Under the pieces are notes generated by a model that saw only the letters and a program-made list of their open reading frames with translations, searched no databases and was not told the DNA's origin. Shown here piece by piece: positions 9,669 through 62,183 of a DNA stretch of 64,000 nt. Location: the IMG/VR virus record IMGVR_UViG_3300032288_004964, positions 310,001 to 374,000 of that record; one strand, 5' to 3'. Within the stretch, counting starts at the first letter, position 1. Every line of letters begins with the position of its first letter. The translations under genes were made by a program, and so were the position numbers.

Positions 9669-10223
9669 ATGAATAGTATAAACGCAAATAAAAAAATGAA
9701 ATGGTCTAAAAACCGGAAGAGATTGCGTGATGCTTTGGAGAGTAATGCTTACGGTAACCAACTGGGTAAAATGTTAGAGAATTTTCAATTACTTAAACCA
9801 GAAGAGTTCTTACAATGCAAAAATAATTTACTAAAATTAGCATTGAAAAATGCCTCAAAAGAATGTGCTGTCTTTCTAATAGAAAAAGAAGCTAGAGCAA
9901 ATATTGAGTTCTGTTTGTTAGAAACCGATTATAATAAAATTGATAAAGTTTATAACTTAATATCTGAATTAAATTCAAAATATGATTTCACAGGGCCTTC
10001 TTTGCCTCAAAAGAAAACTTTAATAGCTAGATTAATTAGTCCTGAAAAAGTCTCAGAAAATTCTGATAGAGTTGATTATCTATTCAAAATGATTTGCGAA
10101 GGATTTTTCACATCAGAAGATGTTATGGAACAAATAGAAATATCTTACAAAGATAAACAAGAACAAAAAAGACATTTTACCTCCCTGTTCAGGGATTTAA
10201 AACTAAGAGAATTAGGAATATGA
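9669..10223 (+). CDS. Hypothetical protein with C-terminal tag
   Basis: Ends FRDLKLRELGI. Confidence 0.55.
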   Translation: MNSINANKKMKWSKNRKRLRDALESNAYGNQLGKMLENFQLLKPEEFLQCKNNLLKLALKNASKECAVFLIEKEARANIEFCLLETDYNKIDKVYNLISELNSKYDFTGPSLPQKKTLIARLISPEKVSENSDRVDYLFKMICEGFFTSEDVMEQIEISYKDKQEQKRHFTSLFRDLKLRELGI

Positions 10224-10465
10224 GGAATTTATATAAAATGAAATATGAATACTCACGTCAACCTTGGTATAATGGTGATGATGTATTTGAGCTTGACTTT
10301 ATTCATACAGATAGATATTTTTCACAATTTGGAACAGATTGTTCTTGGACTAATTTTAGAACTAAAGAAACTATTAATATCTGGGATATGTGTATGAGAA
10401 AAATAACTGATGATGAAGCTAAGCAATTAGTAAGAGAGTATAATCTAAATCAATTGGGAATATGA
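10220..10465 (+). CDS. Hypothetical protein with C-terminal tag
   Basis: Ends VREYNLNQLGI. Confidence 0.55.
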   Translation: MRNLYKMKYEYSRQPWYNGDDVFELDFIHTDRYFSQFGTDCSWTNFRTKETINIWDMCMRKITDDEAKQLVREYNLNQLGI

Positions 10466-10881
10466 AATTATATTATGATGGTATAGGATATCCTTGTAAA
10501 TTGAAATCTGAAATGAAAGGTAATAATACTTGGTATAGTATGGAACCAGTAAAAGTTAAAGTAACTTTACCTAAATATATCTATGATAAGATTTTATTAG
10601 ATATCAAATTAGACAATGAGAATGATACTTTAAGGGATATATTTAGATTTAAATTACTACTTCAAAGAGGAGAGTTGTCAAGAAATAAAGATAAGTGGAG
10701 TAGACATTCTCAAGTTGTTCAAAATGAACTTTGGGAATTAGAAACATATTTAGATAGATTAACAATTACTTCTAAATTCAGAAATGGTGATGTTACTGCT
10801 ATATTTGGTTTATCAATATTTTCTGAAATAGAATTAGACAAATCAGATATTAGAGAAATTATATTAAATGAACTTATTTAA
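10462..10881 (+). CDS. Hypothetical protein with C-terminal tag
   Basis: Ends IREIILNELI. Confidence 0.55.
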   Translation: MKLYYDGIGYPCKLKSEMKGNNTWYSMEPVKVKVTLPKYIYDKILLDIKLDNENDTLRDIFRFKLLLQRGELSRNKDKWSRHSQVVQNELWELETYLDRLTITSKFRNGDVTAIFGLSIFSEIELDKSDIREIILNELI

Positions 10882-10883
10882 AA

Positions 10884-10972
10884 GCGAAAACACCGAGGAG
10901 CGAATTCGGTGTTCTCTATAGCCTAAACTATACCGGTCCTAAGCTGGGGGATCGCTCTCCCCTCCGGTTCAT
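10884..10972 (-). ncRNA. Candidate structured small RNA with complementarity to 23S rRNA H69-H71
   Basis: GC-rich island with four stems; G-U pairs favour the minus strand; TATATATA motif upstream (10977-10989); final hairpin followed by U-run. Confidence 0.55.
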
Positions 10973-11055
10973 ACATTATATATAAATAATATAAACTTTC
11001 TTTTTTAAAAATATAAAACATAAGTAAATTAATGTCAAACTAAAAAACAAACAAA

Positions 11056-11367
11056 ATGGTAAAAAATGAAATTAAAGTAGATTTCTCTAACACAGAAGAA
11101 CTAAAAAACATTATTGAGAAAGCTTATTTTACTGAAGGAATGGGTGGAAAAATCCTTGGAAAAAACCACTTCATTAAAATTAATGAATCTGATGATATTC
11201 ATTACACAATCTTCAAAGACATGAATAGTGTGACTGTAAAGTTACACAATCCAGAAATCATTGATGGATCTATGAGATTCATGATTGATGAAACACAAGG
11301 AGAAGTAAGATTGTATCCTATTTCAATCTATTGTATTAAAGAAGAAAACAAGTATATTTTCTACTAA
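11056..11367 (+). CDS. Hypothetical protein
   Basis: 103-aa ORF, A-rich leader. Confidence 0.55.
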   Translation: MVKNEIKVDFSNTEELKNIIEKAYFTEGMGGKILGKNHFIKINESDDIHYTIFKDMNSVTVKLHNPEIIDGSMRFMIDETQGEVRLYPISIYCIKEENKYIFY

Positions 11368-11368
11368 T

Positions 11369-11491
11369 ATGAAAAAACTTTGGAGATACCTATTTGTTGT
11401 TAAACCTGAAACAGGTGAAACACTACCCGTAGGATACTTTATCCTATTCATTATCCTAATAATTGGTGGATATTATATAACTAAAAACTAA
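11369..11491 (+). CDS. Small membrane protein (40 aa, not in ORF track)
   Basis: MKKLWRYLFVVKPETGETLPVGYFILFIILIIGGYYITKN, one TM segment, fills operon gap. Confidence 0.45.
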   Translation: MKKLWRYLFVVKPETGETLPVGYFILFIILIIGGYYITKN

Positions 11492-11502
11492 AACTAAAAA
11501 CT

Positions 11503-15036: not shown

Positions 15037-15351
15037 TTATGCCAATATTTTGGATAAGACTAATTCTCTTTTAATTGATTTAAGTCCATCATCAAATCTT
15101 ATTTGTGTGTAACTGTTATATTTAATCCAGAAATCATCTGGGTGTGTATAACAATCTTTTTTTGTTTTTAATGTTAAGAATGGTAGTTCTTCAACAATCT
15201 CTTTAAATACTGTTAGAATATCAACATCACTATAGTATTCCATTTCTGATAATCTATTACAAAAATAATCCATACAAGGTTGGACATTTCTTTGAACAAC
15301 CTCTAAGTATTTCTTTTCAGTTTTAGATGAATCTATGTACCAATTTAACAT
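15037..15351 (-). CDS. Hypothetical protein with C-terminal tag
   Basis: Ends KRELVLSKILA. Confidence 0.55.
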   Translation of the reverse strand: MLNWYIDSSKTEKKYLEVVQRNVQPCMDYFCNRLSEMEYYSDVDILTVFKEIVEELPFLTLKTKKDCYTHPDDFWIKYNSYTQIRFDDGLKSIKRELVLSKILA

Positions 15352-15881
15352 CTTATAATATTTTTAATCTTTATATCTCTTTCTCTTTGTAACTTAATAC
15401 TAGCTATTTCTTTTTCAATATCATTACACTCTTTTGTTTTTTCAACTAAATGTGCAATGTAATTATCAACTATTAATGTTAATGTTTCAACTGTTCTATC
15501 TAATTTATCAAAGTGTATTAAAGATGATTTGGTCTTCTTCAACATATCTACTAAGTAATTTAAAAAGTCATCTATATCAAAGTATAACTGAAACAACTCC
15601 AATCTTCTATCTCTTAAAAGAGATGGTGGTGTTATGTAAACTTTTGCCCAAACTCTCCTAATAGAAGGTAGTATTAAATCTAAAGTTTCAGTTTCATCAT
15701 CATTATATAAACAACCCTTAAATTCTTCTGTGTCAAATAAAGTATATTTTTCATTAACAATACTATTTAAAACAGATTCAAATTCATTTACATTTGTAAT
15801 TCCTTCCAAAAGAGTCTTAAAAAGTAGGCTCTTATATTTTGGGTGATTTTTTATCTCTAAAAATGGTATCTTTTCTGACAT
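15345..15881 (-). CDS. Hypothetical protein with capsid-like segment and C-terminal tag
   Basis: LILPSIRRVWAKV; ends ERDIKIKNIIRC. Confidence 0.55.
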   Translation of the reverse strand: MSEKIPFLEIKNHPKYKSLLFKTLLEGITNVNEFESVLNSIVNEKYTLFDTEEFKGCLYNDDETETLDLILPSIRRVWAKVYITPPSLLRDRRLELFQLYFDIDDFLNYLVDMLKKTKSSLIHFDKLDRTVETLTLIVDNYIAHLVEKTKECNDIEKEIASIKLQRERDIKIKNIIRC

Positions 15882-16359: not shown

Positions 16360-16650
16360 TTATTGTAATACTTTTTCTAATTTTTCATTTCTTTCCCACC
16401 ATTTAATATTATCATCAACTGTCCTAACAAAAATAGGATCTAATTTTTGAATGTGATGTAACATCTTTGATTTAAATTTTTCCCAATATTCTTTACCAAA
16501 CATTTCTAAGTTGGTAATTAAAATTGAGTATTGAATAATCTCAGAATCAGTTAAGTAAAGTTGAATACTTGTTCCTAATATTAAACAATTGTAATAATCT
16601 TTTCTTTCATTGAAGTTAAGACTTCCTCCAATAATATCTAAATTAGCCAT
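16360..16650 (-). CDS. Hypothetical protein with C-terminal tag
   Basis: Ends ERNEKLEKVLQ. Confidence 0.55.
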   Translation of the reverse strand: MANLDIIGGSLNFNERKDYYNCLILGTSIQLYLTDSEIIQYSILITNLEMFGKEYWEKFKSKMLHHIQKLDPIFVRTVDDNIKWWERNEKLEKVLQ

Positions 16651-17553: not shown

Positions 17554-17565
17554 GCTAACTCTTTT
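17535..17565. terminator. Bidirectional intrinsic terminator
   Basis: AAAAGAGTTAGC-TTAA-GCTAACTCTTTT. Confidence 0.8.
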
Positions 17566-28673: not shown

Positions 28674-29600
28674 ATGGGTAATATAGGATATTGTTGTATT
28701 AATATCTCTCTAAATGAGGGTAAGAGTAAGAAAGAACAAATAACTGTCAATAGAGGAATGACTAAGAAAACATTTGAGACCAAAGGTCTTGGATATGTAT
28801 CTGAATTAGCAGTACAGAATATTAATGATCTTGAGAAAATACTTCAATGGAATTTTAGAAACAATATTCTTGTTTATAGAATGTCAAGTGACATGTTCCC
28901 ATGTATTGGCTTCTATAAATTGGAAGATTTGCCAAACTTTAAGCTTATATCTAATAAATTAAAATTAATAGGCGATTACTCAAAATCCAAAGGAATGAGA
29001 CTTTCCTTTCACCCAACTCACTTCTGTATTCCAGCTAGTGAAAACCCAATTGTTGTAAAAAATGCTATTGATGAATTAGATAAACATGCTCAAATAATGG
29101 ATATAATGGGGTTAGACCAGACACATTATTACCCAATTAATATACATGTTAACACAACTAAACCAACAAGAGAAGAAGCCGCTGAGAGATTTTGCCTTCA
29201 ATTTTATAATCTAAGTGAATCTTGTCAAAAAAGATTAGTAGTTGAAAATGATGATGGTCCAAATCAATATTCAACTAAAATTTTATATGATTTGATTTAT
29301 AAAAAAATAGGAATTCCGATTACACATGATTTTCACCATCATAATTACGGACCTCAGGATATCTCACAAGAAGAAGCAATTAGACTTGCTTGTTCTACCT
29401 GGGGTGATATAACACCAATGACTCATATGAGTTCACCAAAAACATTAGAAGATAACTCAGGAAAACAAACAGCACATGCAGATTACATTTATGAGGAAAT
29501 TAAAACATTTGGTCTTGACTTTGATACAGAGATTGAGGCGAAAGCTAAAGACCTCGCAGTTATTAGATACAGAAATCAATTTAAAGTTCTTAAAGGGTGA
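28674..29600 (+). CDS. uvsE: UV-damage endonuclease (UvsE/UvdE)
   Basis: IGYCCIN, YRMSSDMFP, RLSFHP, RLVVENDD, DFHHH, AHAD, EAKAKD. Confidence 0.92.
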   Translation: MGNIGYCCINISLNEGKSKKEQITVNRGMTKKTFETKGLGYVSELAVQNINDLEKILQWNFRNNILVYRMSSDMFPCIGFYKLEDLPNFKLISNKLKLIGDYSKSKGMRLSFHPTHFCIPASENPIVVKNAIDELDKHAQIMDIMGLDQTHYYPINIHVNTTKPTREEAAERFCLQFYNLSESCQKRLVVENDDGPNQYSTKILYDLIYKKIGIPITHDFHHHNYGPQDISQEEAIRLACSTWGDITPMTHMSSPKTLEDNSGKQTAHADYIYEEIKTFGLDFDTEIEAKAKDLAVIRYRNQFKVLKG

Positions 29601-29826
29601 TCATGTCTTAATAAGACACTATACACATAAAAGAATAGAAGGTAAGATTGTTAAGATAACTTATAGTAAATGTAAATCTAATTCTAAATATTTTATACTA
29701 TATAGGGTTGAATTTATAAGTGGTCCACAAGATGAAATTATTAAGTATGACTTTTCTGACTTTGAATTAGAACATATAGATAAAGATAAAGAAAGAGATT
29801 GGAAATTAAATCAAATATTGAAATAA
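29476..29826 (+). CDS. Hypothetical protein with C-terminal tag (start uncertain)
   Basis: FLKGDHV SH3-like segment; ends ERDWKLNQILK. Confidence 0.5.
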   Translation: MQITFMRKLKHLVLTLIQRLRRKLKTSQLLDTEINLKFLKGDHVLIRHYTHKRIEGKIVKITYSKCKSNSKYFILYRVEFISGPQDEIIKYDFSDFELEHIDKDKERDWKLNQILK

Positions 29827-31384: not shown

Positions 31385-31888
31385 TTATTTTAATATTTCT
31401 TCTATTTTCATATCTCTTTCTTCATACTTTTCAGTTATATCTGCTAATCTAACTGTATATTTTGAAGTCATTGTTTCTAAGTTTACAAACTTAGTAATTG
31501 AAAACATTACAAGTTTTCTAAATTTCTTTTCATTGAAAAAATTATCTAATTCATCATCACTATTAAAGTCAAAGTTACTAACCCTATAAGCCTTTGATAC
31601 AAGATTACTACCTTCTATTTTAAAGATATTAAAAGATATTAGTGTTGATATAAATGATATTTTCTGCCAATGTTTATCTAAAAATGTTCCTAACCAAAGA
31701 GTTGGATCAACTGTAGCAACTCTAACATTAGTGTTCTCATGTCCCATTCTTTTGCTATTATCTAAAAGAAGTTTTAGACCTTCCATATTATACTCTGAAA
31801 ATGGATAAATTGATATACTTTTTGGATCAAGACTAATCTGTGGATCACTAGCTGACCAAATATTATGTTTTAATAGTTCCTCAAACAT
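31385..31888 (-). CDS. Hypothetical protein with C-terminal tag
   Basis: Ends ERDMKIEEILK. Confidence 0.55.
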   Translation of the reverse strand: MFEELLKHNIWSASDPQISLDPKSISIYPFSEYNMEGLKLLLDNSKRMGHENTNVRVATVDPTLWLGTFLDKHWQKISFISTLISFNIFKIEGSNLVSKAYRVSNFDFNSDDELDNFFNEKKFRKLVMFSITKFVNLETMTSKYTVRLADITEKYEERDMKIEEILK

Positions 31889-32301
31889 TATAAATCATAT
31901 TTTTTTATTTCTATCCCAGCTTCTTTTAAGAAGTCTAAACCTGATGTATCTTTATAGTTTTCAAGATAAACTAACCTTTTTATTCCAGATTGTAGTATAA
32001 GTTTAGAACATTCTTTACAAGGTGAATGTGTTTGATATAAAGTACCACCTTCACAGGAATGTCCGTGTTTAGCACATTTTAAAATAGCGTTAGCTTCTCC
32101 GTGTATAACATACCAATTAGTATCACCATCACCATTTTCACAAGAGTTATCAAATCCGGTTGGTGTGCCATTATATCCATCGGATATAATCATGCCGTTT
32201 TTAACTATTAAAGCACCTACTTGTTTTCTGGTGCAATGTGATAGTTTAGCCCACTCTGTAGCCATTTTAAGATAAACTATATCATACTTCTCTTGTTTCA
32301 T
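31888..32301 (-). CDS. dCMP deaminase
   Basis: SHCTRKQVGA, GYNGTP, HGEANAI, SPCKEC. Confidence 0.93.
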   Translation of the reverse strand: MKQEKYDIVYLKMATEWAKLSHCTRKQVGALIVKNGMIISDGYNGTPTGFDNSCENGDGDTNWYVIHGEANAILKCAKHGHSCEGGTLYQTHSPCKECSKLILQSGIKRLVYLENYKDTSGLDFLKEAGIEIKKYDL

Positions 32302-32410
32302 CTGGGAACATTTTTTTTATTTTTTCTTTTCTTATATCTTGTTTTTCTAACCCAATCATTTTCATAATCCAATCTGTTGAAAAGTATTTTTTACTGTATA
32401 TACTTAACAT
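32282..32410 (-). CDS. 42-aa protein: portal(gp20)-like fragment + C-terminal tag (not in ORF track)
   Basis: MLSIYSKKYFSTDWIMKMIGLEKQDIRKEKIKKMFPDETREV. Confidence 0.5.
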   Translation of the reverse strand: MLSIYSKKYFSTDWIMKMIGLEKQDIRKEKIKKMFPDETREV

Positions 32411-32429
32411 ATCTTTTATTAAATCTAAT

Positions 32430-32618
32430 CTACTTTTCATCAAATATTCTTTTTATTTTATTCTTTCTAATATTGGTCCTATATTTTCTAATAGCTCCTA
32501 TAAAAGCAGATTGTGGATATATTCTACCATTATTGTGTGTATTATCAAATGTTTGTAGAATACCTTTTAAGACAATTACCTTTTCATTAATATTAACTAA
32601 TTTATCTTCTTCACTCAT
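32430..32618 (-). CDS. 62-aa protein: prohead protease(gp21)-like fragment + C-terminal tag
   Basis: VLKGILQTFDNTHNNGRIYPQSAF...Y then IRKNKIKRIF. Confidence 0.6.
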   Translation of the reverse strand: MSEEDKLVNINEKVIVLKGILQTFDNTHNNGRIYPQSAFIGAIRKYRTNIRKNKIKRIFDEK

Positions 32619-32796
32619 CTGGAAATAATCTTTTTATTTTTTCTTTTCTGATATTAGCTCTTTCATCTTTAAGTAGATTATTGATAACACTACCAACCAT
32701 TGGATTAGTAACAAACCAATCACCGGATCCTCTTCTTGATTTATCAGCAATCATAGATGATGCTTTTAATAATTTATCAAGTAAGTCTTTCTGCAT
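32611..32796 (-). CDS. 61-aa protein: major capsid(gp23)-like fragment + C-terminal tag
   Basis: LLKASSMIADKSRRGSGDWFVTNPMVGSVI then IRKEKIKRLF. Confidence 0.6.
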   Translation of the reverse strand: MQKDLLDKLLKASSMIADKSRRGSGDWFVTNPMVGSVINNLLKDERANIRKEKIKRLFPDE

Positions 32797-36458: not shown

Positions 36459-36873
36459 GTTTTCTTATGTTGCTTTCTCTTTTCAACTTTAAATCCTGAT
36501 ATGAATTATCAATGATTTTATCTAAAGCATCCTTTTGTAATCTTATATTTACATCAGTTATAATCTTTGCATATTTTTTTGCAAATTCAATATTCTCATC
36601 TTTATATTCATTGTAATCATCTCGTGATAAAATCACTAATCCTGTTTCTGGACAAACACAAAAATGAATTCTTTGTGTTAATATTGATAAGCCAAGTGCA
36701 TTGTTTGTTCTGCTTATCATTTTTGTATCTATGTCGATAGAATAATAAAACTCTTTCTTTTTCTTATCAGTATAGATATCTATTTCTATTTCTTCTAATC
36801 TATACTCAATTAAATCATCAATAAATTCTGATAATTTATTTATCATGTAATCAGTCACTAATAATAGAATCAA
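36448..36873 (-). CDS. Hypothetical protein with C-terminal tag
   Basis: Ends KRESNIRKLIG; real start probably MINKL. Confidence 0.55.
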   Translation of the reverse strand: MILLLVTDYMINKLSEFIDDLIEYRLEEIEIDIYTDKKKKEFYYSIDIDTKMISRTNNALGLSILTQRIHFCVCPETGLVILSRDDYNEYKDENIEFAKKYAKIITDVNIRLQKDALDKIIDNSYQDLKLKRESNIRKLIG

Positions 36874-37252
36874 TTTTTCTATCTCTTTCTAAGATTAAAA
36901 ACTTTCTTTCTAAAAAAGTTGATATTTTGTCTGGTAAACTAACACCTTGTTTAAGTAATTCGTCATAATATGGTTTTCCCAAAACATTTATACAAGCTAT
37001 AATCGATACCACATTACTATCTTTATATCCTTCAATTTCAACATCTTCTCCTAAAATATGATATGTGCTTTTTGCTGATATTCCTTGTAAAGTAGTATAG
37101 GTTGATCCTGCTGTAGTTATTGTACCAGAAGTTATTGTAGATGATCCAGATCCATATATTCCATATGCACCATATGCAACACTTGATCCAGTTAGACCAT
37201 ATCCTATAGCTGATGTGTGCACATTATTTCCGTTGATATTTACAAATCCCAT
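36851..37252 (-). CDS. Hypothetical protein (G/S/T-rich N-terminus) with C-terminal tag
   Basis: Ends ERDRKIDSIISD. Confidence 0.55.
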   Translation of the reverse strand: MGFVNINGNNVHTSAIGYGLTGSSVAYGAYGIYGSGSSTITSGTITTAGSTYTTLQGISAKSTYHILGEDVEIEGYKDSNVVSIIACINVLGKPYYDELLKQGVSLPDKISTFLERKFLILERDRKIDSIISD

Positions 37253-38896: not shown

Positions 38897-39421
38897 TTAT
38901 AAAATTTTACTAATTTGTATATCTCTATAAAGACCTGTAAAAGATTCTCTTATATCTTCATCATATTCATAGAAATTTCTATTTCCGTAAAAGTCATAAT
39001 GTTCTCTATTTACTTTTTTCTCAATTTTATCATATGCTTCTTTGACTAAATCAAAACAGTCTTCTTTTTCAGTCCATTTAACCATATTATAAATCAAATC
39101 AAAACCAATGTCATTAAATCCTCTAAAGAAGTATTTATTAGAATAGTTATTAAAATAGTTTTCAATTATTACTTTATTTAAATTTTCAATCCTTTTTGGT
39201 ATTGATAATAAAGGTGTTGTGAAATAAAACTCACAACCTAAACACATTAAATGTTTTGTTAATTTCAAAATAGCATTATGAACTTTAGAATCTAAGAAAA
39301 CATATACAATATCATCTTTAATAAAACATACAGGCACATGTTCATATTTCTTAAACATAAGAAATTTTCCTTTAATAGTCCAGGACTTATTATTATCAGG
39401 TATTAAATCACTTAATTCCAT
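38897..39421 (-). CDS. Hypothetical protein with C-terminal tag
   Basis: Ends YRDIQISKIL. Confidence 0.55.
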   Translation of the reverse strand: MELSDLIPDNNKSWTIKGKFLMFKKYEHVPVCFIKDDIVYVFLDSKVHNAILKLTKHLMCLGCEFYFTTPLLSIPKRIENLNKVIIENYFNNYSNKYFFRGFNDIGFDLIYNMVKWTEKEDCFDLVKEAYDKIEKKVNREHYDFYGNRNFYEYDEDIRESFTGLYRDIQISKIL

Positions 39422-43898: not shown

Positions 43899-44264
43899 AT
43901 GAATCAAAGATCAATTAATCTTTCACCTTGGAAAGAAATATCTATTACTAGAAGAATGCAACATCATACTATGATTGATGTTGCTACAATCATTATTGGT
44001 TATAATGATTATTACTTTTATATCCAAGATGATATTGAGAAGATAATTGATGTTAGTTGTATGCCTAACTATATTAAAGAAGATTGGGTTAATTATAATA
44101 AAAAAGAATTAACAATTAATATAGTAGAAGACCATATAAAAAAGTATGTTGATTTAAGAGATTCTGAAATTTATTTAGAAGTACCTAATCAAACTTATGA
44201 TGATATTATAAATGAGCTACAATCAATTAAAAGAGATTTAATAATTAAAAAGATTATTATTTAA
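43899..44264 (+). CDS. Hypothetical protein with C-terminal tag
   Basis: Ends KRDLIIKKIII. Confidence 0.55.
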   Translation: MNQRSINLSPWKEISITRRMQHHTMIDVATIIIGYNDYYFYIQDDIEKIIDVSCMPNYIKEDWVNYNKKELTINIVEDHIKKYVDLRDSEIYLEVPNQTYDDIINELQSIKRDLIIKKIII

Positions 44265-53863: not shown

Positions 53864-54334
53864 ATGGAAAAAAACCAGTTAAATAACTTAATTAGATTCT
53901 GTTTTAATTTCCATAGAAGTATGGATTGTGACTGGACTATGCAACATCCAAGTTATATTTTAGAGAAGTGGAATAAGTATATTGGTGTTAAACCTAATAA
54001 GTTAGAATTATATCCATCTAATGACCTGACTATCAAGTGGTTAAAAACTTGGAATGTTAGTAATAAAGATTGGGAAGAGTTAAAAGAGATTGTTACTTTT
54101 ATTCAAGTTGTTAATATGAGAGCACTTGTTGTATCTAGTGGAAATAAAGGTAATAGATTTATACAATGGTCACCATCTGAACTATTAGATGAATTTGAAA
54201 GATTGATTGGTGATAAAAATAAAATAAACAAAGATGAATATAAAGGTTTGCATGAACTAGTTGATAGAGAAGTTGAATATTGGCTATGGCAAACAGATAA
54301 CAAAAGAGATTATAATTTAAATTTATTAGTATAA
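53864..54334 (+). CDS. Hypothetical protein with C-terminal tag
   Basis: ATG 4 nt after TATATTTG; ends KRDYNLNLLV. Confidence 0.55.
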   Translation: MEKNQLNNLIRFCFNFHRSMDCDWTMQHPSYILEKWNKYIGVKPNKLELYPSNDLTIKWLKTWNVSNKDWEELKEIVTFIQVVNMRALVVSSGNKGNRFIQWSPSELLDEFERLIGDKNKINKDEYKGLHELVDREVEYWLWQTDNKRDYNLNLLV

Positions 54335-54871: not shown

Positions 54872-55632
54872 TGAAAGAAAATAATAATAATTTCAGTAAT
54901 GAAATAAGAGACCTGCGATTAGCAGTTCTAATAGATGCAGACAATGTTCCGTATTCTAATGTAAAACAAATGTTTGAGGAGATTGCAAAATATGGAACTC
55001 CGACATTTAAAAGAATTTATGCAGACTGGACTAAACCAACCGTATCTGGTTGGAAAACCGTTCTGCTTGAAAATGCAATCACACCAATTCAACAATACAG
55101 TTACTCTACTGGTAAAAATTCAAGTGATAGTGCTATGATTATTGATGCGATGGATATACTTTACTCTGGTAAAGTTGATGGATTTTGTATTGTATCAAGT
55201 GATAGTGACTTCACAAGACTTGCTACAAGATTAAGAGAAGCTGGTATGAAAGTAATTGGTATTGGTGAAAAGAAAACACTAAAACCATTTATTGTTAGTT
55301 GTGATAAGTTTATTTACTTTGAAATCTTAAAAGCAAATAAAAATGTAACTGAAGGTGCTGTTGCTGCGGCTACTGAGACAACATCTAAAGTAGATAAAGA
55401 ATTAATTCATTTAATTAATGATAGTATTTCTGACTTAGCTGATGAAACAGGATGGGCCTTCTTAGGTATGTTAGGAACTTTAATCTTAAAAAAGAAACCA
55501 GATTTTGACTCAAGAAACTATGGATTTGAGAAACTACTTCCATTCTTAAAGAGTCTAAAGAAATTTGAGATTGATGAAAGGGAAACTGGTAAAGGTAAAA
55601 CAAAACATGTTTATATAAAAACTATTTCATAA
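54871..55632 (+). CDS. NYN (LabA/DUF88) ribonuclease with C-terminal OST-HTH/LOTUS domain
   Basis: AVLIDADNV, GKNSSDSAMIIDAMD, VSSDSDF, DFDSRNYGF. Confidence 0.92.
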   Translation: MKENNNNFSNEIRDLRLAVLIDADNVPYSNVKQMFEEIAKYGTPTFKRIYADWTKPTVSGWKTVLLENAITPIQQYSYSTGKNSSDSAMIIDAMDILYSGKVDGFCIVSSDSDFTRLATRLREAGMKVIGIGEKKTLKPFIVSCDKFIYFEILKANKNVTEGAVAAATETTSKVDKELIHLINDSISDLADETGWAFLGMLGTLILKKKPDFDSRNYGFEKLLPFLKSLKKFEIDERETGKGKTKHVYIKTIS

Positions 55633-56054
55633 TGTTAAATAATAAAAATAAACAAATAATTGATACACTTATTGAAGTAACTAAAAGTGGTGACTTGGTG
55701 TGGATAGAAACTGATTCTACTTCTGATAAAAGAAAACATCAAAGGGATATGCACGCCTTTGGTGAAGATGGTACTAAATATGAAACTCAAGTTAGATTTC
55801 ATATTGTCAATTCTACTTTCGTGTTAGAATCTAGTCCTTCTTTGTGGATTAAAAATAAAGACTTACCGGGTGGTTCTTATTACATATATGGAGGTAGTAA
55901 TGATCTTACTTCCTTAAGAGATGTTATTAAAGAAAAATATTGCTCAGATATGAATCCTATGATTCAAGATTTAGAAGACCAACTTGAGCAAATATGTAAA
56001 GGTATTTCTATTTCTACTTATAGAGATAATAAGATAAATAAGATAATAGATTAA
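55632..56054 (+). CDS. Hypothetical protein with C-terminal tag
   Basis: Ends YRDNKINKIID. Confidence 0.55.
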   Translation: MLNNKNKQIIDTLIEVTKSGDLVWIETDSTSDKRKHQRDMHAFGEDGTKYETQVRFHIVNSTFVLESSPSLWIKNKDLPGGSYYIYGGSNDLTSLRDVIKEKYCSDMNPMIQDLEDQLEQICKGISISTYRDNKINKIID

Positions 56055-56068: not shown

Positions 56069-56692
56069 ATGGATTTAAGTATAACAATATTAGTATTATT
56101 TTTAACAATAGTTCCTTTATTTATCGCTTACTTTCTTGGTTCAATACCAACATCGGTTTGGATAAGTAAATGGATATATGGAATTGACATCAGAGAATTT
56201 GGAAGTAAAAATGCAGGTGCTACAAACACTCTTAGAGTATTAGGCAAATGGGCAGCAATTCCTGTTTTAGTCATAGATATTTTAAAAGGATTCTTTGCAG
56301 TTTATATAACACATTATACTATTATGATGGATAATACAGCTGTCATGTGTTTATTAGGACTTTTTGCTATTATTGGTCATATATTTCCAATTTTTGCTAA
56401 ATTTAGAGGTGGTAAAGGAGTTGCTACAACATTAGGTGTTTCAATTGCTTTATTTCCAATAGCTACTTTGATATCTATTTTTGTATTTTTAATATCTGTT
56501 ATTTATTATAGAATTGTATCATTATCATCAATCATCGCTAGTCTTTTACTTCCAATATTTGTTTACTTCTTAACGGATAATCAAACTTTAGTAGACTTTT
56601 CAATGTTTATACCTGTTTTGTTTATAATAACACATCATAAAAATATTAAAAGAATAATTAATAAATCAGAACCTAAATTTACCTTACTATGA
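56069..56692 (+). CDS. plsY: Glycerol-3-phosphate acyltransferase
   Basis: YFLGSIP, GSKNAGATN.LR, DILKG, GHIFP, GGKGVAT, H..NIKR. Confidence 0.95.
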   Translation: MDLSITILVLFLTIVPLFIAYFLGSIPTSVWISKWIYGIDIREFGSKNAGATNTLRVLGKWAAIPVLVIDILKGFFAVYITHYTIMMDNTAVMCLLGLFAIIGHIFPIFAKFRGGKGVATTLGVSIALFPIATLISIFVFLISVIYYRIVSLSSIIASLLLPIFVYFLTDNQTLVDFSMFIPVLFIITHHKNIKRIINKSEPKFTLL

Positions 56693-57021
56693 GTAGTTGG
56701 AGTGAAAGATTCTTAAAGCCTTGTCCTTATTGTAATGGTAAGATTACAGATCACTCTTATGATAGAAGAATAGTTTTCAAGTGTATTCCTTGTAATCTAT
56801 ATAAAGATTATCCAGGTTTACTACAAACTAAAGTAAGTCCTGTTCCTGTTCCTTATGTAGATAAAGATGGTAGTCCAGTAGATCCAAAAGATGTTAAGAA
56901 TCAAGAATATTACCACCAAAATGCTAATGAGGAAGCAATTGATGAATTTAATAAATGGGTAGATAAAGAAAATCTACAAAAAACTAGAGAAGAAAAACTA
57001 ACAAAAATATTTAATACATAA
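56689..57021 (+). CDS. Zn-ribbon protein with C-terminal tag
   Basis: LKPCPYC...CIPC; ends TREEKLTKIFNT. Confidence 0.55.
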   Translation: MSSWSERFLKPCPYCNGKITDHSYDRRIVFKCIPCNLYKDYPGLLQTKVSPVPVPYVDKDGSPVDPKDVKNQEYYHQNANEEAIDEFNKWVDKENLQKTREEKLTKIFNT

Positions 57022-57296: not shown

Positions 57297-58115
57297 ATGG
57301 AAATTAATAAAATATACCAAGGAAACTCCTTAGACCTACTTAAACAGATGCCTGATAACTCAGTTGATCTTGTTATCACATCACCTCCCTATGCTGACTT
57401 AAAAGTTTACATAGATAATCCAGGAATACTCGCAGATGATTATGTAGAATGGTTTTTACCATTTTGTAATGAGATATGTAGAGTTATAAAACCAACAGGT
57501 TCTTTTATTCTAAATATTAATGATAAAGTAGAAAATGGATTTAGACATCCTTATGTTTATGATCTAATATCAGCAATTCACAAGAAAACAGATTTAAAAA
57601 TGTTTGAAAGATTATTTTGGAATAAAATGAAAGGTCTTCCAAATAGGAGTAGATTTGGTGATAGAGTTGAATATATATTCTGGTTTGCTAAAGAAAAAGG
57701 ATTTCAGTTTTATATAGATGAAATGAGAACCGAGTATGCTCAGAAATCTATTGAGAGAATGAAGAATCCTCTTAAAAAGAGATTTGCTAGAGATAAAGAT
57801 AATCAAGATGCTAATGATTATAAGGATTGGGAACCAAATCCAAAAGGAGCTCTTCCAACTACATTGGTTAGTATATCATCTGAGTCTAAAAGAATTGCTG
57901 ATAATCATGTAGCGGTTTATCCAGTAGAATTAGTTAAATACTTTATAAAAGGAGCAACTAAAGAAGGTGATTTAGTTTTAGATCCGTTTATGGGTACTGG
58001 AACAACTGGACTAGCTGCTAAGTTACTAAATAGAAATTGGATGGGATTTGAAATGCAAAGTGATTATATATCGCTTGCTGAAAAAAGAATAGGTGATTAT
58101 GTGGAGAATATCTAA
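57297..58115 (+). CDS. Beta-class DNA amino-methyltransferase (probably N4-cytosine)
   Basis: TSPPY catalytic motif before LDPFMGTGTT SAM-binding motif. Confidence 0.9.
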   Translation: MEINKIYQGNSLDLLKQMPDNSVDLVITSPPYADLKVYIDNPGILADDYVEWFLPFCNEICRVIKPTGSFILNINDKVENGFRHPYVYDLISAIHKKTDLKMFERLFWNKMKGLPNRSRFGDRVEYIFWFAKEKGFQFYIDEMRTEYAQKSIERMKNPLKKRFARDKDNQDANDYKDWEPNPKGALPTTLVSISSESKRIADNHVAVYPVELVKYFIKGATKEGDLVLDPFMGTGTTGLAAKLLNRNWMGFEMQSDYISLAEKRIGDYVENI

Positions 58116-58365
58116 GGAAACAAGTAAGATTAAATCAATTAAAAGAGGTGACTATGATGTTGATAGTGTAATTGTTATACCTGGTGTATGTTCTTATGAG
58201 AATGTTTATACAAAGCAAAACTTTTTATATTTCTCAAATAGTGATTATAATAAAACAATATCTGTTGAGTTTGTATCAGAGGGTGATCTTGATAGATTCT
58301 TTACTCAGATATTTAGAGATAATAAATTAAATCAAATATTAGGTGATACTAAAGATAAAAAATAA
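58093..58365 (+). CDS. Hypothetical protein with C-terminal tag
   Basis: FRDNKLNQILGD near end. Confidence 0.55.
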   Translation: MIMWRISKETSKIKSIKRGDYDVDSVIVIPGVCSYENVYTKQNFLYFSNSDYNKTISVEFVSEGDLDRFFTQIFRDNKLNQILGDTKDKK

Positions 58366-59971: not shown

Positions 59972-60084
59972 TGAAAGAACTAGAAGATATATTTAATACA
60001 GAGGAATTTAAATCACTTCCTTGGATTAAAAGATTTTGGATAAGAGTTAAAGTAGCTTTTATACAAACTATAAATATGATGTAA
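59971..60084 (+). CDS. 37-aa peptide (not in ORF track)
   Basis: TAATG coupling; MKELEDIFNTEEFKSLPWIKRFWIRVKVAFIQTINMM. Confidence 0.4.
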   Translation: MKELEDIFNTEEFKSLPWIKRFWIRVKVAFIQTINMM

Positions 60085-60131
60085 AAAAAATTAGGTTAAT
60101 ACTAATTTTATTTTTACATTTGTAGATAATT

Positions 60132-60203
60132 GCAGGTATAGCTCAGTGGTAGAGCAGGATTCTCTAAAAGTCTTTGTCGTGGGTTCGATCCCCGCTACCC
60201 GCA
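60132..60203 (+). tRNA. tRNA with CUA anticodon (amber suppressor)
   Basis: Acceptor GCAGGTA/TACCCGC (one A-C mismatch), D arm GCTC/GAGC, anticodon stem GGATT/AGTCT with loop CT-CTA-AA, T arm GTGGG-TTCGATC-CCCGC; CCA not encoded. Confidence 0.88.
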
Positions 60204-60219
60204 CTAAAATAAAACAAAC

Positions 60220-60627
60220 ATGAAAAAAATCATAACAATTCTGTTCTTATCATTTACCTCTGTTATTTTTGCAAAGGGTAATGATTCAATCTTTGAAAAA
60301 TCACCAATATTATTTTCAAAGTCAAATTTTAATTACAATACTCAAAAGATTAATCTAAAAATGAGTATGTATAAAGACTATAGTTCATCTGATAAGAGAA
60401 CTGCTGGTTTAGTTTTAATGTTAGCTGGTTTAGCATTCACAACCGCTTCAATACTTGAAAGTGATGCTGCTTATGGTACTTGGACTAACAATCCTCAACC
60501 TGGTAATCCATACAATCAAACTTATACTACAAAACCTTTTATTCAACAATTCCCACGTAATATAATGTTAGTAGTTGGTATTGGATTTACATTCTCTGGT
60601 TTTGGTGTTATGGCTAGTAATAAGTAA
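60220..60627 (+). CDS. Exported/membrane protein
   Basis: Signal peptide plus two hydrophobic segments. Confidence 0.6.
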   Translation: MKKIITILFLSFTSVIFAKGNDSIFEKSPILFSKSNFNYNTQKINLKMSMYKDYSSSDKRTAGLVLMLAGLAFTTASILESDAAYGTWTNNPQPGNPYNQTYTTKPFIQQFPRNIMLVVGIGFTFSGFGVMASNK

Positions 60628-60700
60628 TGAAGAATTTAAATAATTTTTTAATTGAATAGAAATTAGATAAAGGGAGGGAAGGCATAAGAATATATACATT

Positions 60701-61408
60701 ATGGAACATTTTGTATATATTCATAAAAACCCTGTAAATGAAGAGGTATTTTATATTGGTCAAGGAACAAGACATAGAGATAAAAATGAAAGAGCTTATT
60801 CTAAAAGGTCAAGAAGTAAATGGTGGTATAATTATGTTAATAAGTATGGAATGCCTATAGTTGAGATAGTGGCTACCAATCTCAGTAAAGAAGATGCTGA
60901 TAAATTAGAAATAGACTTAATAAAGTCATATGGTAGAAAAGATATAAATGAAGGTACTTTGGTTAACCTAACCGATGGTGGTGATGGTAGTGGGAAAAGA
61001 TCTTTAGAATATTGTGAACAATTATCATTGAGAATGAGAGGAGAGAATCATCCTATGTGGGGTAAAAAACACAATAAAAATTGGGTAGAAAATAACTCTA
61101 AATCGAAAATTGGTAAAAAGTTATCAGAGGAAACTAAAAAGAAAATGTCTGAATCAAGAAAAGGTCAGAAAAGAACAGATGAAACCAAAAGAAAAATGTC
61201 TGAATCATTATCAGGTGATAGAAATCCTATGTATGGAAGAACTGGTGATAGAAATCCAGCTTCTAAATTAACTTGGAATATAGTTAAAGAGATAAGAGAT
61301 TCATATAAAGAAGGTAATACTTCTATAAGAAAACTAGCTAAAAAATATAATGTTTCAAACATAACAATTGAAAATGTTATTAAACATAGAACTTGGAAGG
61401 AATTATAA
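60701..61408 (+). mobile_element. GIY-YIG-like homing endonuclease with NUMOD3 repeats
   Basis: FVYIH...FYIGQG..R, LVNLTDGGDG, SEETKKKMSES repeats, C-terminal HTH. Confidence 0.85.
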
Positions 61409-61426
61409 AAACTAATAGATAAAGAA

Positions 61427-61504
61427 ATGAATCAAGCTTATGAACTTGGATCTGTATCAAAACAAGATTATCGCAACTATAAATTAGAGAAGTTAGGAAT
61501 TTAA
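61427..61504 (+). CDS. 25-aa peptide that is essentially only the C-terminal tag (not in ORF track)
   Basis: MNQAYELGSVSKQDYRNYKLEKLGI; stop overlaps next ATG. Confidence 0.4.
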   Translation: MNQAYELGSVSKQDYRNYKLEKLGI

Positions 61505-61797
61505 TGGCATACGGTGATGGTGATATTATAAAAACTAAATTCCTTTGTAAAACAACATGTAGTGGTGGTTCCTATGGTAATATCAAAGAAAGATTTATTA
61601 AAGGAAAATGGTATGATGGTGAATATGAAACTTGGTGGTTTGAAGGTGGTTATAAAATGAATGGTGGTCACCGAAAATACTGGGCTATAAATGAAGGTGG
61701 TGTTAGAGAAGATATTGGAAAGTCTATGTTCAAAATAATTTTTGAAACAGATACAAATGAATTAAGAGATAATAAAATAGAACAAATATTAAAATAA
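61504..61797 (+). CDS. Hypothetical protein with C-terminal tag
   Basis: Ends ELRDNKIEQILK. Confidence 0.55.
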   Translation: MAYGDGDIIKTKFLCKTTCSGGSYGNIKERFIKGKWYDGEYETWWFEGGYKMNGGHRKYWAINEGGVREDIGKSMFKIIFETDTNELRDNKIEQILK

Positions 61798-62183
61798 TGG
61801 AAGAAAAAGATAATAAAATTGTAGTAAGTAATGAGTTTGTAGATATCTACCGAAACTTCAATATAGGTAATCAAGTTGATAAAATGAAAGCTCTAACTAA
61901 AAGAGAGTTGTATTTACTTTTAACTTTGTGTTTAGATAAACATTCTGATGAAAATCCAACGGTTAATAGTAATTTCAAAGACTTTAAAGAACAATGTCTT
62001 GAGATATTTGATGTTCAAGATGAAAAAACAACTGAGAATCAAATACTTTTAGATTTAATTAAAGAAAGTGGGGACCAATATATTGAAACAGATGATATTG
62101 TAGATTCTAAAGGTGATAAACTACCTGAACCTTATACTAAGGAAGAAATTAGAGATATTAGAATTGGTATCATCGGAAAATAA
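61797..62183 (+). CDS. Hypothetical protein with C-terminal tag variant
   Basis: Ends IRDIRIGIIGK. Confidence 0.55.
   Translation: MEEKDNKIVVSNEFVDIYRNFNIGNQVDKMKALTKRELYLLLTLCLDKHSDENPTVNSNFKDFKEQCLEIFDVQDEKTTENQILLDLIKESGDQYIETDDIVDSKGDKLPEPYTKEEIRDIRIGIIGK

What the first reader, a model, noticed from the sequence alone, without database searches (positions are those of the whole stretch)
9669..62183. A shared C-terminal tag R-x-x-[K/N/I]-[L/I]-x-x-[I/L] on about 25 otherwise unrelated small proteins
Seen at or near the C-termini of ORFs 9669 (RDLKLRELGI), 10220 (REYNLNQLGI), 10462 (REIILNELI), 15037 (RELVLSKIL), 15345 (RDIKIKNII), 16360 (RNEKLEKVL), 18442 (RNKNLDKLL), 29476 (RDWKLNQIL), 31385 (RDMKIEEIL), 32282/32430/32611 (RKxKIKxxF), 36448 (RESNIRKLI), 36851 (RDRKIDSII), 38897 (RDIQISKIL), 43899 (RDLIIKKII), 53864 (RDYNLNLLV), 55632 (RDNKINKII), 56689 (REEKLTKIF), 58093 (RDNKLNQIL), 58374 (RNNKIEQIL), 59222 (RNSRIDDIL), 61427 (RNYKLEKLGI), 61504 (RDNKIEQIL) and 61797 (RDIRIGII). 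It is absent from the recognisable enzymes and from all proteins with the N-terminal leader. DNA is divergent, so conservation is at the protein level. Inference: an amphipathic docking helix linking a library of variable N-terminal binding domains to one common partner (AAA+ protease, chaperone, scaffold or compartment), conceptually like F-box adaptors; alternatively a degron.
Basis: partly seen in the sequence, partly recalled or inferred. Interest (0 to 1): 0.88.

Follow-up and report, generated by a model that had tools for sequence, protein, structure and literature searches.

The report
Shared C-terminal tag on huge-phage proteins
About one in five proteins of this uncultivated huge bacteriophage, otherwise unrelated to one another, end in the same nine-residue helix (R-[D/E/N]-x-K-[I/L]-x-x-[I/L]-[L/I/F]); it is a real, protein-level label carried mainly by early genes, and what reads it is still unknown.

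Summary
In the window, 21 ORFs match R[DEN]..[LI]..[ILV] within 8 residues of the C-terminus and 1 matches internally; shuffled proteins give 0.3. The window is huge-phage DNA from a Bacteroidota host. In its closest complete relative, LR745206 (635 kb), 166 of 995 ORFs carry the tag, and their N-terminal parts form 164 separate BLASTP clusters. Mixed I/L codons, stronger conservation than the rest of each protein, and presence at 24-38% GC show selection on the peptide, not the DNA. The conserved residues lie on one face of a short helix. Copies also occur inside proteins at domain ends. Tagged genes sit preferentially behind host-type TAnnTTTG promoter boxes. They avoid the ATATATA-type motif of a second, mutually exclusive class that has an N-terminal leader. 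The tag is confined to one sub-clade of huge phages. It is absent from T4, PTm1, a Lak phage, LR756501 and sampled cellular DNA. Best reading: a docking or sorting helix that links early accessory proteins to one common receptor. The receptor is unidentified; the clade's own N-domain-less ClpC/ClpP machine is the leading, unproven candidate.

The parts
9669..10223 (+). tagged ORF, 184 aa; tag codons 10191-10217 (RDLKLRELG, then I and stop)
   Evidence: tagged orthologue in LR745206
10220..10465 (+). tagged ORF, 81 aa; tag 10433-10459 (REYNLNQLG, then I)
10462..10881 (+). tagged ORF, 139 aa; tag 10852-10878 (REIILNELI)
   Evidence: followed by a terminator-like hairpin, with no coupled downstream gene
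15037..15351 (-). tagged ORF, 104 aa; tag 15043-15069 (RELVLSKIL)
15345..15881 (-). tagged ORF, 178 aa; tag 15354-15380 (RDIKIKNII)
16360..16650 (-). tagged ORF, 96 aa; tag 16366-16392 (RNEKLEKVL)
   Evidence: orthologues in LR745206 and LR756502 keep the tag
29476..29826 (+). tagged ORF, up to 116 aa (5' end overlaps ORF 28674-29600); tag 29794-29820 (RDWKLNQIL)
31385..31888 (-). tagged ORF, 167 aa; tag 31391-31417 (RDMKIEEIL)
32282..32443 (-). tagged ORF, 53 aa, R-K sub-variant; tag 32306-32332 (RKEKIKKMF plus acidic tail)
32430..32618 (-). tagged ORF, 62 aa, R-K sub-variant; tag 32442-32468 (RKNKIKRIF)
32611..32796 (-). tagged ORF, 61 aa, R-K sub-variant; tag 32623-32649 (RKEKIKRLF)
36448..36873 (-). 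tagged ORF, 141 aa; tag 36454-36480 (RESNIRKLI)
36851..37252 (-). tagged ORF, 133 aa; tag 36860-36886 (RDRKIDSII)
38897..39421 (-). tagged ORF, 174 aa; tag 38900-38926 (RDIQISKIL)
   Evidence: Family of 148 clusters at 50% identity; 15 of 16 distant full-length members read still end in an R-anchored tag-like helix. AlphaFold2 pLDDT 92.8, tag = helix 164-173
43899..44264 (+). tagged ORF, 121 aa; tag 44232-44258 (RDLIIKKII)
53864..54334 (+). tagged ORF, 156 aa; tag 54305-54331 (RDYNLNLLV)
   Evidence: TTTG ... TATATTTG host-type promoter just upstream
55632..56054 (+). tagged ORF, 140 aa; tag 56022-56048 (RDNKINKII)
56689..57021 (+). tagged ORF, 110 aa (Cys-rich N-terminus); tag 56986-57012 (REEKLTKIF)
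58093..58365 (+). tagged ORF, 90 aa; tag 58315-58341 (RDNKLNQIL), then 7 more residues
58374..58667 (+). tagged ORF, 97 aa; tag 58620-58646 (RNNKIEQIL), then 6 more residues
59222..59971 (+). tagged ORF, 249 aa; tag 59939-59965 (RNSRIDDIL)
   Evidence: 210 homologues; the end SRNSRIDDILN is nearly invariant in the 120 listed. AlphaFold2 leaves residues 242-249, most of the tag, unstructured
61427..61504 (+). 25-aa remnant that still encodes the tag (61472-61498, RNYKLEKLG, then I); probably not a functional gene
   Evidence: the intact 190-aa orthologue is LR745206 507338-507910
61504..61797 (+). tagged ORF, 97 aa; tag 61765-61791 (RDNKIEQIL)
61797..62183 (+). tagged ORF, 128 aa; tag 62151-62177 (RDIRIGIIG)

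Best explanation
The tag is a short amphipathic recognition helix: R-[D/E/N]-x-K-[I/L]-x-x-[I/L]-[L/I/F], usually followed by a G/D/N/E/K cap and the stop codon. It is selected at the protein level. It marks a large class of small accessory proteins, made mainly from host-type (early) promoters, for one common receptor. SHOWN: the motif is real. It acts as a peptide, not as DNA. Its carriers are mutually unrelated. It is kept far better than the rest of each protein. It can also sit inside proteins at domain ends. It is confined to one sub-clade of huge Bacteroidota phages. Its genes belong to a different transcription class from the N-leader and structural genes. INFERRED: the conserved face (R1, D2, K4, I5, I8, L9) plugs into a groove of a single partner, so each protein needs the tag to work. 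It is therefore a docking or sorting signal rather than a passive ornament. MOST SPECULATIVE STEP (about 0.25 on its own): the receptor is the clade's own Clp machine, an N-domain-less ClpC-type unfoldase with a UVR/M-domain plus two ClpP. ClpC enzymes are known to depend on adaptor proteins. Tagged proteins would then be either adaptors that hand host targets to the protease or clients handed to it themselves.
For: Enrichment at C-termini: window 21 versus 0.29 expected; whole LR745206 166 of 995 ORFs versus 7.0 in shuffles, with the 132 internal regex hits not noticeably enriched. Peptide rather than DNA: mixed I/L codons. In 14 orthologue pairs the tag is 71% identical against 50% for the rest. 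The tag is nearly invariant across 120 listed homologues of the 249-aa family (of 210 found) and recognisable in members of the 174-aa family down to E about 1e-4. The same tag occurs at 24-38% GC. Unrelated carriers: 164 clusters from 166 proteins. Two AlphaFold2 models have no PDB match, and the one searched against BFVD has none either. Modularity: P0362 joins a different N-terminal domain to the last ~50 tagged residues of the 174-aa family. No free carboxylate is needed: 18 strong internal copies against 1 in shuffles, each followed by a cap residue. Early class: 31% of operons holding tagged genes have TAnnTTTG within 100 nt upstream, versus 13% of operons with neither signal (p = 1e-4), 5% of N-leader operons and 8% of random windows. 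Only 10% have the ATATATA-type motif, versus 73% of N-leader operons and 39% of structural genes. Lineage restriction: present in the window, LR745206, LR756502, LR756504 (R-K variant), a 712-kb JGI contig and many IMG/VR contigs. Absent from LR756501, LR756500, LR756508, Lak-B1, PTm1 and T4 samples, and not dense in 120 cellular loci. Candidate receptor: relatives encode two full-length ClpP and a ~700-aa ClpC without Clp_N. The ClpC is 84-88% identical across more than 120 clusters, higher than the capsid protein's 53-76% among the GenBank relatives.
Against: No partner was identified, and no tool here could test binding. A ClpC homologue (52% identical) is also in LR756508, which lacks the tag. 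Hsp70 is likewise present in tag-less LR756501. So co-occurrence is not specific. I could not show that the window's own genome encodes the ClpC. Only 31% of tag operons show the host-type -7 box, so 'early' is a statistical tendency, and it rests on a promoter consensus recalled from the literature. In the 174-aa family the tag helix is modelled with high confidence (pLDDT about 85-93), so it may pack on its own domain there rather than being free.
Confidence: 0.5

Rival explanations
1. Timer degron. The tag makes early proteins substrates of a protease (the phage ClpC/ClpP or a host protease), so they are cleared when the late programme starts.
For: The class is early-biased. A phage-encoded ClpC-like unfoldase and two ClpP are present. 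The tag lies near the C-terminus, as many bacterial degrons do.
Against: The last 0-8 residues after the tag vary and are often charged, unlike ssrA-type C-degrons (established knowledge). Strong copies occur inside proteins, including a DNA helicase. Near-invariance over hundreds of homologues is more than expected for a signal whose loss would only lengthen a half-life.
Confidence: 0.17
2. Encapsulation or packaging signal. The helix docks cargo onto the inner face of the capsid or of another phage-built protein compartment, as encapsulation peptides do in bacterial microcompartments and encapsulins.
For: It is a short terminal amphipathic helix shared by unrelated cargo. It never coincides with the N-terminal leader, which resembles the T4 capsid targeting sequence in position and role (PMC3012670). 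That would fit two alternative address labels.
Against: Tagged genes avoid the promoter-like motif shared by N-leader and structural genes and favour host-type promoters. The T4-like head module (portal, capsid protein and neighbours, 165-215 kb of LR745206) is nearly free of tags, and no head gene ends in one. About 170 different cargo species would be unprecedented. No shell gene was found; I did not search for one systematically.
Confidence: 0.1
3. Docking onto an abundant host hub (RNA polymerase, ribosome, nucleoid protein, sliding clamp or chaperone), which concentrates host-takeover proteins where they act.
For: The carriers are early, small and orphan, like the T4 early 'monkey-wrench' proteins (established knowledge). 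The h-x-x-h-h spacing with a preceding D/E/N resembles PIP-box-like clamp motifs in form.
Against: Equally close relatives presumed to infect Bacteroidota hosts (LR756501, PTm1, Lak) lack the tag. That argues for a lineage-specific rather than a conserved host receptor. The T4-like polymerase pieces of LR745206, the canonical clamp clients, do not end in the tag, whereas T4 gp43 and gp55 end in their own SLDFL motif. A weak scan found no tag-dense cellular locus, giving no sign that host proteins use the same groove.
Confidence: 0.13
4. Membrane-targeting amphipathic helix, of the MinD or FtsA type.
For: Terminal position, helical periodicity and basic residues beside aliphatic ones.
Against: There are only three aliphatic residues and a conserved acidic or amide residue at position 2. 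The solvent face is often acidic. The invariant Arg sits within the apolar face rather than at its edge (helical-wheel inference). This pattern suits a protein groove better than a lipid surface.
Confidence: 0.04
5. No docking role. The tag is either a nucleic-acid signal or recombination cassette at gene ends, or an intramolecular capping helix inherited from a common 3' module.
For: Codon identity among identical residues is slightly higher in the tag (69% versus 57%). Tagged genes cluster (55 adjacent pairs versus 27.5 expected) and overlap the next gene a little more often (58% versus 43%). A tagged 3' remnant survives at 61427-61504. The tag helix is confidently modelled in one family.
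Against: Synonymous and I/L-exchanging codons are used freely. The tag is always in frame and on both strands. 23% of tagged genes have no same-strand downstream gene. The motif persists across 24-38% GC. Folds of very different size and secondary structure would not share one capping helix, and in the 249-aa family the tag is unstructured.
Confidence: 0.06

Closest known systems
T4 capsid targeting sequence (CTS) of the internal proteins
   Same: A ~10-residue terminal peptide is the only thing shared by a diverse set of small phage proteins, and it sorts them to one destination (PMC3012670). The phage here has T4-like portal, capsid protein and terminase.
   Different: The CTS is N-terminal, late, and removed by the prohead protease. 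The tag here is C-terminal, early-biased, and never coincides with the N-terminal leader, which is the better CTS analogue.
Adaptor docking on AAA+ unfoldases (MecA-ClpC; SspB XB motif-ClpX)
   Same: A variable substrate-binding part is joined to a short conserved C-terminal element that docks on the unfoldase. ClpC-type enzymes need adaptors (established knowledge). Relatives encode ClpC and ClpP.
   Different: There is no sequence similarity to MecA or to XB motifs. The phage ClpC lacks the N-domain that helps bind MecA. A library of about 170 adaptors has no precedent. Binding was not tested.
F-box and poxvirus Ank-PRANC adaptor families
   Same: Many otherwise diverse proteins carry one small docking element (C-terminal in the PRANC proteins) that links them to a single degradation machine.
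   Different: Those are ~40-50-residue domains that bind Skp1 in eukaryotes. This is a 9-residue helix in a bacterial virus. The resemblance is one of logic only.
Encapsulation peptides of bacterial microcompartments and cargo-loading peptides of encapsulins
   Same: Short terminal peptides (amphipathic helices in the microcompartment case), joined to unrelated cargo by variable linkers.
   Different: No shell or encapsulin gene was identified. The consensus sequences differ. The tagged genes look early, not co-expressed with structural genes.
Dockerin-cohesin modules of cellulosomes
   Same: C-terminal docking modules on unrelated enzymes. The only PDB profile hit of the tag is a dockerin helix, L-x-R-D-Y-V-L-G-K-I (4uyp_B).
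   Different: That hit has E about 1 and is not significant. Dockerins are ~70-residue duplicated calcium-binding modules, and no such loops precede the tag.

Membership tests
T4-type capsid targeting sequence | N-terminal position, with a hydrophobic-x-Glu cleavage site for the prohead protease | tested here: not met
   The tag is C-terminal or internal. The separate N-leader class fits this feature instead and shares a gene with the tag in only 1 of 73 cases.
T4-type capsid targeting sequence | Expression together with head genes (late) | tested here: not met
   Tag operons carry the ATATATA-type motif in 10% of cases, versus 73% of N-leader operons and 39% of structural genes. They are enriched for the host-type TAnnTTTG box.
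ssrA-like C-terminal degron | Conserved apolar residues at the extreme C-terminus with a free carboxylate | tested here: not met
   0-8 variable, often charged residues follow the tag. There are 18 strong internal copies.
AAA+ adaptor docking motif (MecA / SspB type) | Physical binding of the conserved element to the unfoldase, which delivers a bound substrate | not testable with these tools
   Only co-occurrence could be examined. ClpC without Clp_N and two ClpP are in LR745206 and its relatives, but a ClpC homologue is also in tag-less LR756508.
Microcompartment encapsulation peptide / encapsulin cargo-loading peptide | A cognate shell protein encoded with the cargo | not tested
   No systematic shell search was possible. 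The Pfam and PHROG scans run here returned no BMC or encapsulin family, but they covered few genes.
Microcompartment encapsulation peptide / encapsulin cargo-loading peptide | A short terminal amphipathic helix on unrelated cargo | tested here: met
   the conserved residues lie on one helical face (inference from the logo).
Clamp-binding (PIP-like / T4 gp45-binding) C-terminal peptide | Presence on the canonical clients (replicative polymerase, late sigma factor) | tested here: not met
   The gp43-like pieces of LR745206 end without the tag. T4 gp43 and gp55 end in SLDFL(F/Y), which is unrelated.
Dockerin | Duplicated ~22-residue calcium-binding loop-helix repeats | tested here: not met
   The tag is a single 9-residue helix with no conserved loop upstream. 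The PDB hit has E about 1.
Membrane-targeting sequence (MinD/FtsA type) | A strongly amphipathic helix with a broad apolar face flanked by basic residues | tested here: inconclusive
   There are only three aliphatic positions, a conserved acidic or amide residue at position 2 and a frequently acidic solvent face. No lipid-binding test was possible.

The most novel reading that the evidence does not exclude
A clade of huge phages carries a library of about 170 small early proteins. Their variable bodies each grip a different host protein, for example defence or housekeeping factors. Their common C-terminal helix plugs them into one phage-encoded machine, the N-domain-less ClpC/ClpP1P2 protease. 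That would be a bacterial-virus counterpart of the F-box and PRANC adaptor families and a programmable targeted-degradation system. An equally novel alternative is that the helix is a simple linear import signal for a phage-built intracellular compartment.
Probability: 0.15. Interest if true: 0.95.

Novelty: new variant of a known kind. Interest (0 to 1): 0.8.

Why it matters
Huge phages are almost entirely genetic dark matter. Here a single nine-residue label organises about 17-20% of the proteome (about 28% of the 60-150-aa proteins) into one functional class. A second, mutually exclusive N-terminal label marks another ~7%. That turns hundreds of orphan genes into two testable groups. It predicts one receptor whose identification would explain how these phages deploy their accessory arsenal. 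If the receptor is a protease or a compartment, it offers a minimal, portable tag for targeted degradation or localisation in Bacteroidota. The tag is also a simple marker for recognising this phage clade in metagenomes.

Tried and rejected
Tries that led nowhere:
- Pfam and PHROG scans of 35 tagged proteins gave no family above its curated cut-off and no named function.
- Foldseek searches of two AlphaFold2 models found no fold match: both against PDB and one against BFVD.
- A PDB profile search with the tag gave only an E~1 dockerin helix.
- Literature searches found no description of the motif.

Ideas rejected or weakened:
- Capsid docking by mimicry of a scaffold. A tagged 210-aa gene sits next to a ClpP, but the neighbours are a helicase, a primase and an RNA ligase, not head genes. 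The true T4-like head module lacks tags.
- Sliding-clamp binding. The polymerase pieces lack the tag.
- Hsp70/DnaJ as the specific receptor. Hsp70 is also present in tag-less LR756501 and LR756508.
- Translational coupling. 23% of tagged genes have no same-strand downstream gene.
- A DNA-level motif.

Underpowered or limited tests:
- Co-evolution of the tag type across orthologues between the R-D and R-K genomes: only two tagged orthologue pairs were found.
All hits looked like chance, so this is only a weak test of absence.

Full report
WHAT THE WINDOW IS. The window is 28% G+C. It encodes Hsp70, DnaJ, both topoisomerase II subunits, an RNA ligase, a GMP-reductase-like enzyme, a cell-wall amidase, and a SprB/PKD protein with a CHU_C type IX secretion signal. 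Its Hsp70 is 87% identical to that of LR745206, a 634,780-bp 'uncultured phage' genome, and 84% identical to that of LR756502. These records have the sizes of the curated 634- to 735-kb huge-phage genomes described in PMC7950403. The database places the window's 249-aa protein on a 385,333-bp contig. LR745206 has T4-like terminase, sheath, portal and major capsid protein, so the phage is a very large, distant T4-type myovirus. The type IX secretion signal points to a Bacteroidota host.

In a greedy set of 105 ORFs, R[DEN]..[LI]..[ILV] occurs 21 times within 8 residues of the C-terminus and once elsewhere. That is a roughly 270-fold difference in rate per position. 500 shuffles of each protein give 0.29 C-terminal hits on average and never more than 2. 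A weight matrix gives 20 C-terminal and 0 internal hits in the window. The logo from 37 copies is as follows:
- R, invariant
- D, E or N
- x
- K (60%)
- I or L (100%)
- polar
- polar
- I, L or V (100%)
- L, I, F or G
- then 0-3 residues and the stop.
Upstream there is only a weak preference: K at -3 and a hydrophobic residue at -8.

- ORF 61427 is a 25-aa relic of a gene that is 190 aa long in LR745206. Here it is interrupted by a tRNA, a membrane ORF and a GIY-YIG endonuclease-like ORF.
- The three ORFs at 32282-32796 carry a sub-variant, R-K-x-K-I-K-x-x-F followed by acidic residues.

IT IS A PEPTIDE SIGNAL, NOT A NUCLEIC-ACID ONE. Positions 5 and 8 are encoded by ATA, ATT, TTA and CTA in any combination. 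The motif is always in frame, on both strands. It is present whether or not a gene follows: 23% of tagged genes have no same-strand downstream gene. In 14 orthologue pairs between the window and LR745206, the tag is 71% identical while the rest of the proteins is 50% identical. Synonymous codon identity is only slightly raised, 69% against 57%. The same tag is found in contigs with 24% to 38% G+C.

GENOME-WIDE SCALE AND UNRELATED CARRIERS. I fetched all of LR745206.
- 166 of 995 ORFs carry the tag, against 7.0 in shuffles (maximum 16).
- The 132 internal regex matches show no marked enrichment.
- Tagged proteins are small (median 110 aa): 27-30% of ORFs of 60-150 aa, but 1-3% of those above 300 aa.
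- With the tag removed, the 166 proteins form 164 BLASTP clusters.
- No Pfam family reached its curated cut-off, and only three weak, unnamed PHROG matches were found, in 35 tagged proteins tested.
- Two families were modelled with AlphaFold2. Neither has a structural neighbour in PDB, and the one also searched against BFVD has none there.

CONSERVATION WITHIN FAMILIES. The 249-aa protein (59222-59971) has 210 homologues; the 120 listed are 63-100% identical. Their C-terminus, SRNSRIDDILN, is almost invariant. The 174-aa protein (38897-39421) belongs to a family of 148 clusters at 50% identity. Of 16 distant members read (15 of the family and the fusion protein described next), 15 end in an R-anchored, tag-like helix, even those at E about 1e-4. 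One protein, P0362, joins a different N-terminal domain to the last ~50 residues of this family, tag included. So the tagged end is portable.

SHAPE. On a helical wheel, R1, D2, K4, I5, I8 and L9 fall within one ~160-degree face, and x3, x6 and x7 fall on the other. This is my inference from the logo. AlphaFold2 models the tag as a terminal helix (residues 164-173, pLDDT about 85-93) in the 174-aa family. In the 249-aa family it leaves most of the tag unstructured (residues 242-249, pLDDT below 50).

INTERNAL COPIES. With the weight matrix at >=14 bits, LR745206 has 144 C-terminal and 18 internal copies, against 0 and 1 in shuffles. The internal copies are followed by G, D, N or E. They sit between what look like domains, or close to the N-terminus. 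One lies inside a DNA helicase. A free C-terminus is therefore not required.

EXPRESSION CLASS. A second label, the N-terminal leader MK[HY][LI]K.[YF]..F[EN][SE], marks 15 ORFs in the window and 73 in LR745206. It coincides with the C-terminal tag in a single gene. The two classes share an operon in only 4 of 161 operons that contain either. The table gives the share of operons (for structural genes, the share of genes) with each upstream motif.

| Class | TAnnTTTG within 100 nt upstream | [TA]ATATATA-type motif within 45 nt of the ATG |
|---|---|---|
| Operons with tagged genes | 31%, mostly within 40 nt | 10% |
| Operons with neither label | 13% (p = 1e-4 versus tagged) | 33% |
| N-leader operons | 5% | 73% |
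| Structural genes | 0% | 39% |
| Random 100-nt windows | 8% | not measured |

TAnnTTTG is the -7 box of Bacteroidota primary-sigma promoters; that is established knowledge recalled from memory. I read these figures as follows: tagged genes are preferentially transcribed by unmodified host polymerase, that is early, and N-leader genes belong with the structural, late-like class. Leader peptides that are the only common feature of diverse packaged proteins are known from T4 (PMC3012670). The N-leader is the natural analogue of that signal. This makes a capsid destination for the C-terminal tag less likely.

DISTRIBUTION. In each sample the shuffle expectation for C-terminal hits is at most 0.1.

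| Sample | C-terminal hits / ORFs |
|---|---|
| Window | 20 / 105 |
| LR756502 | 12 / 73 |
| LR756504 | 8 / 73 by regex, almost all of the R-K type |
| LR756501 (127 kb) | 0 / 166 |
| LR756500 | 0 / 87 |
| LR756508 | 0 / 103 |
| Lak-B1 | 0 / 105 |
| Tenacibaculum phage PTm1 | 0 / 149 |
| T4 | 0 / 63 |

- By capsid-protein identity to LR745206, LR756504 (53%) and LR756501 (52%) are equally distant. The tag system was therefore gained or lost within this group.
- A degenerate DNA pattern scan of IMG/VR returned 117 loci. Sixteen of them carry two or more C-terminal tags, up to 9 of 22 ORFs.
- Most of the dense loci checked share genes with LR745206. One dense locus, from a 344-kb contig at 38% G+C, shares none.
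- A 712-kb JGI contig that holds a distant member of the 174-aa family has at least 8 tagged ORFs among about 26, plus one N-leader ORF.
- The same kind of scan of cellular genomes gave 120 loci, none of them tag-dense.
- No cultured phage carries the 249-aa family.

WHAT READS THE TAG?
- Capsid or scaffold: the head module of LR745206 is nearly free of tags and no head gene ends in one.
- Sliding clamp: the T4-like polymerase pieces lack the tag, while T4 gp43 and gp55 end in their own SLDFL motif.
- Hsp70/DnaJ: Hsp70 is also present in tag-less relatives.
- Clp: LR745206 encodes two full-length ClpP (45% and 37% identical to E. coli ClpP) in a replication and nucleotide-metabolism context. 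It also encodes a 701-aa ClpC-type unfoldase with both AAA modules, the UVR/M-domain and the D2-small domain, but no Clp_N domain.
- This ClpC is one of the most conserved proteins of the clade: 84-88% identical over more than 120 clusters, on contigs up to 591 kb. One of those contigs, of 445 kb, also holds a member of the tagged 174-aa family.
- ClpC enzymes are adaptor-dependent (established knowledge). A library of small proteins with a common docking helix would suit such a machine.
- Against this, a 52%-identical ClpC is present in tag-less LR756508, and nothing here tests binding.

VERDICT. The finding is real, highly significant and, as far as I could find, undescribed. It is best described as a lineage-specific short linear docking or sorting motif on early accessory proteins. 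Because the tag is conserved much more strongly than the proteins that carry it, I favour a role on which each protein's function depends: docking on a common receptor, or localisation. A mere turnover signal fits less well. The specific receptor remains a hypothesis: phage ClpC/ClpP about 0.25, a host hub about 0.13, a compartment or capsid about 0.1. In kind, the tag is a new variant of the terminal address labels known from the T4 CTS, encapsulation peptides, adaptor docking motifs and dockerins. In its sequence, its share of the proteome and its phage context it has no described counterpart.

Noticed in passing
window 47-5688 (- strand, ten consecutive ORFs), 5964-6752, 7020-7325, 17564-17998, 22258-22668, 29832-30473, 52224-52790: A second proteome-wide label: the N-terminal leader MK[HY][LI]K.[YF]..F[EN][SE], on 15 window ORFs and 73 ORFs of LR745206. 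It is mutually exclusive with the C-terminal tag. It is preceded by a [TA]ATATATA(C) motif within 45 nt of the ATG in 73% of its operons. In position and role it resembles the T4 capsid targeting sequence (PMC3012670); cleavage and packaging are untested.
   Followed up: partly
window 60132-60204 (+): A tRNA with anticodon CTA, which would read the amber codon UAG (ARAGORN labels it tRNA-Pyl). This suggests possible stop-codon suppression late in infection. About 13% of small tagged ORFs in LR745206 (18 of 142 of 60-200 aa) end in TAG.
   Followed up: no
window 59971-61504: A gene that is one 190-aa tagged ORF in LR745206 (507338-507910) is broken up here. The intervening DNA holds the tRNA, a membrane ORF (60220-60627) and a GIY-YIG homing-endonuclease-like ORF (60701-61408). 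Only a 25-aa tagged 3' remnant (61427-61504) remains.
   Followed up: partly
window 47568-50264 (+): An 898-aa protein with SprB repeats, PKD domains and a CHU_C type IX secretion signal. It is a phage-encoded substrate of the host's Bacteroidota-specific secretion system and a pointer to the host phylum.
   Followed up: no
LR745206 423224-425329 (L011:23224-25329), 123556-124221, 75119-75859: Relatives encode a ClpC-type unfoldase without the Clp_N domain and two ClpP paralogues in a replication-gene context. The ClpC is 84-88% identical across more than 120 clusters.
   Followed up: partly
LR745206 120830-122440 (DNA helicase, residue 198), and 17 other ORFs: Strong internal copies of the tag, each followed by G, D, N or E. 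Some lie between apparent domains and some near the N-terminus. They may mark gene fusions or internal docking sites.
   Followed up: partly
protein P0362 (168 aa, metagenomic): An unrelated N-terminal domain is fused to the last ~50 residues, tag included, of the 174-aa family of window 38897-39421. This is evidence that the tagged end moves between genes.
   Followed up: no
L269 (JGI contig Ga0497410_0000003, 711,805 bp, range 504963-525535): Another huge-phage contig of 712 kb. At least 8 of about 26 ORFs end in the tag and one ORF has the N-leader.
   Followed up: partly
L017 (LR756504 368826-410676) and L111 (IMG/VR 640-kb contig): In these more distant genomes the tag is almost always R-K-x-[RK]-I-x-x-L-[FLI], often with an acidic tail, the same sub-variant as window ORFs 32282-32796. 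This is possible co-variation with the receptor, but only two tagged orthologue pairs were available.
   Followed up: partly
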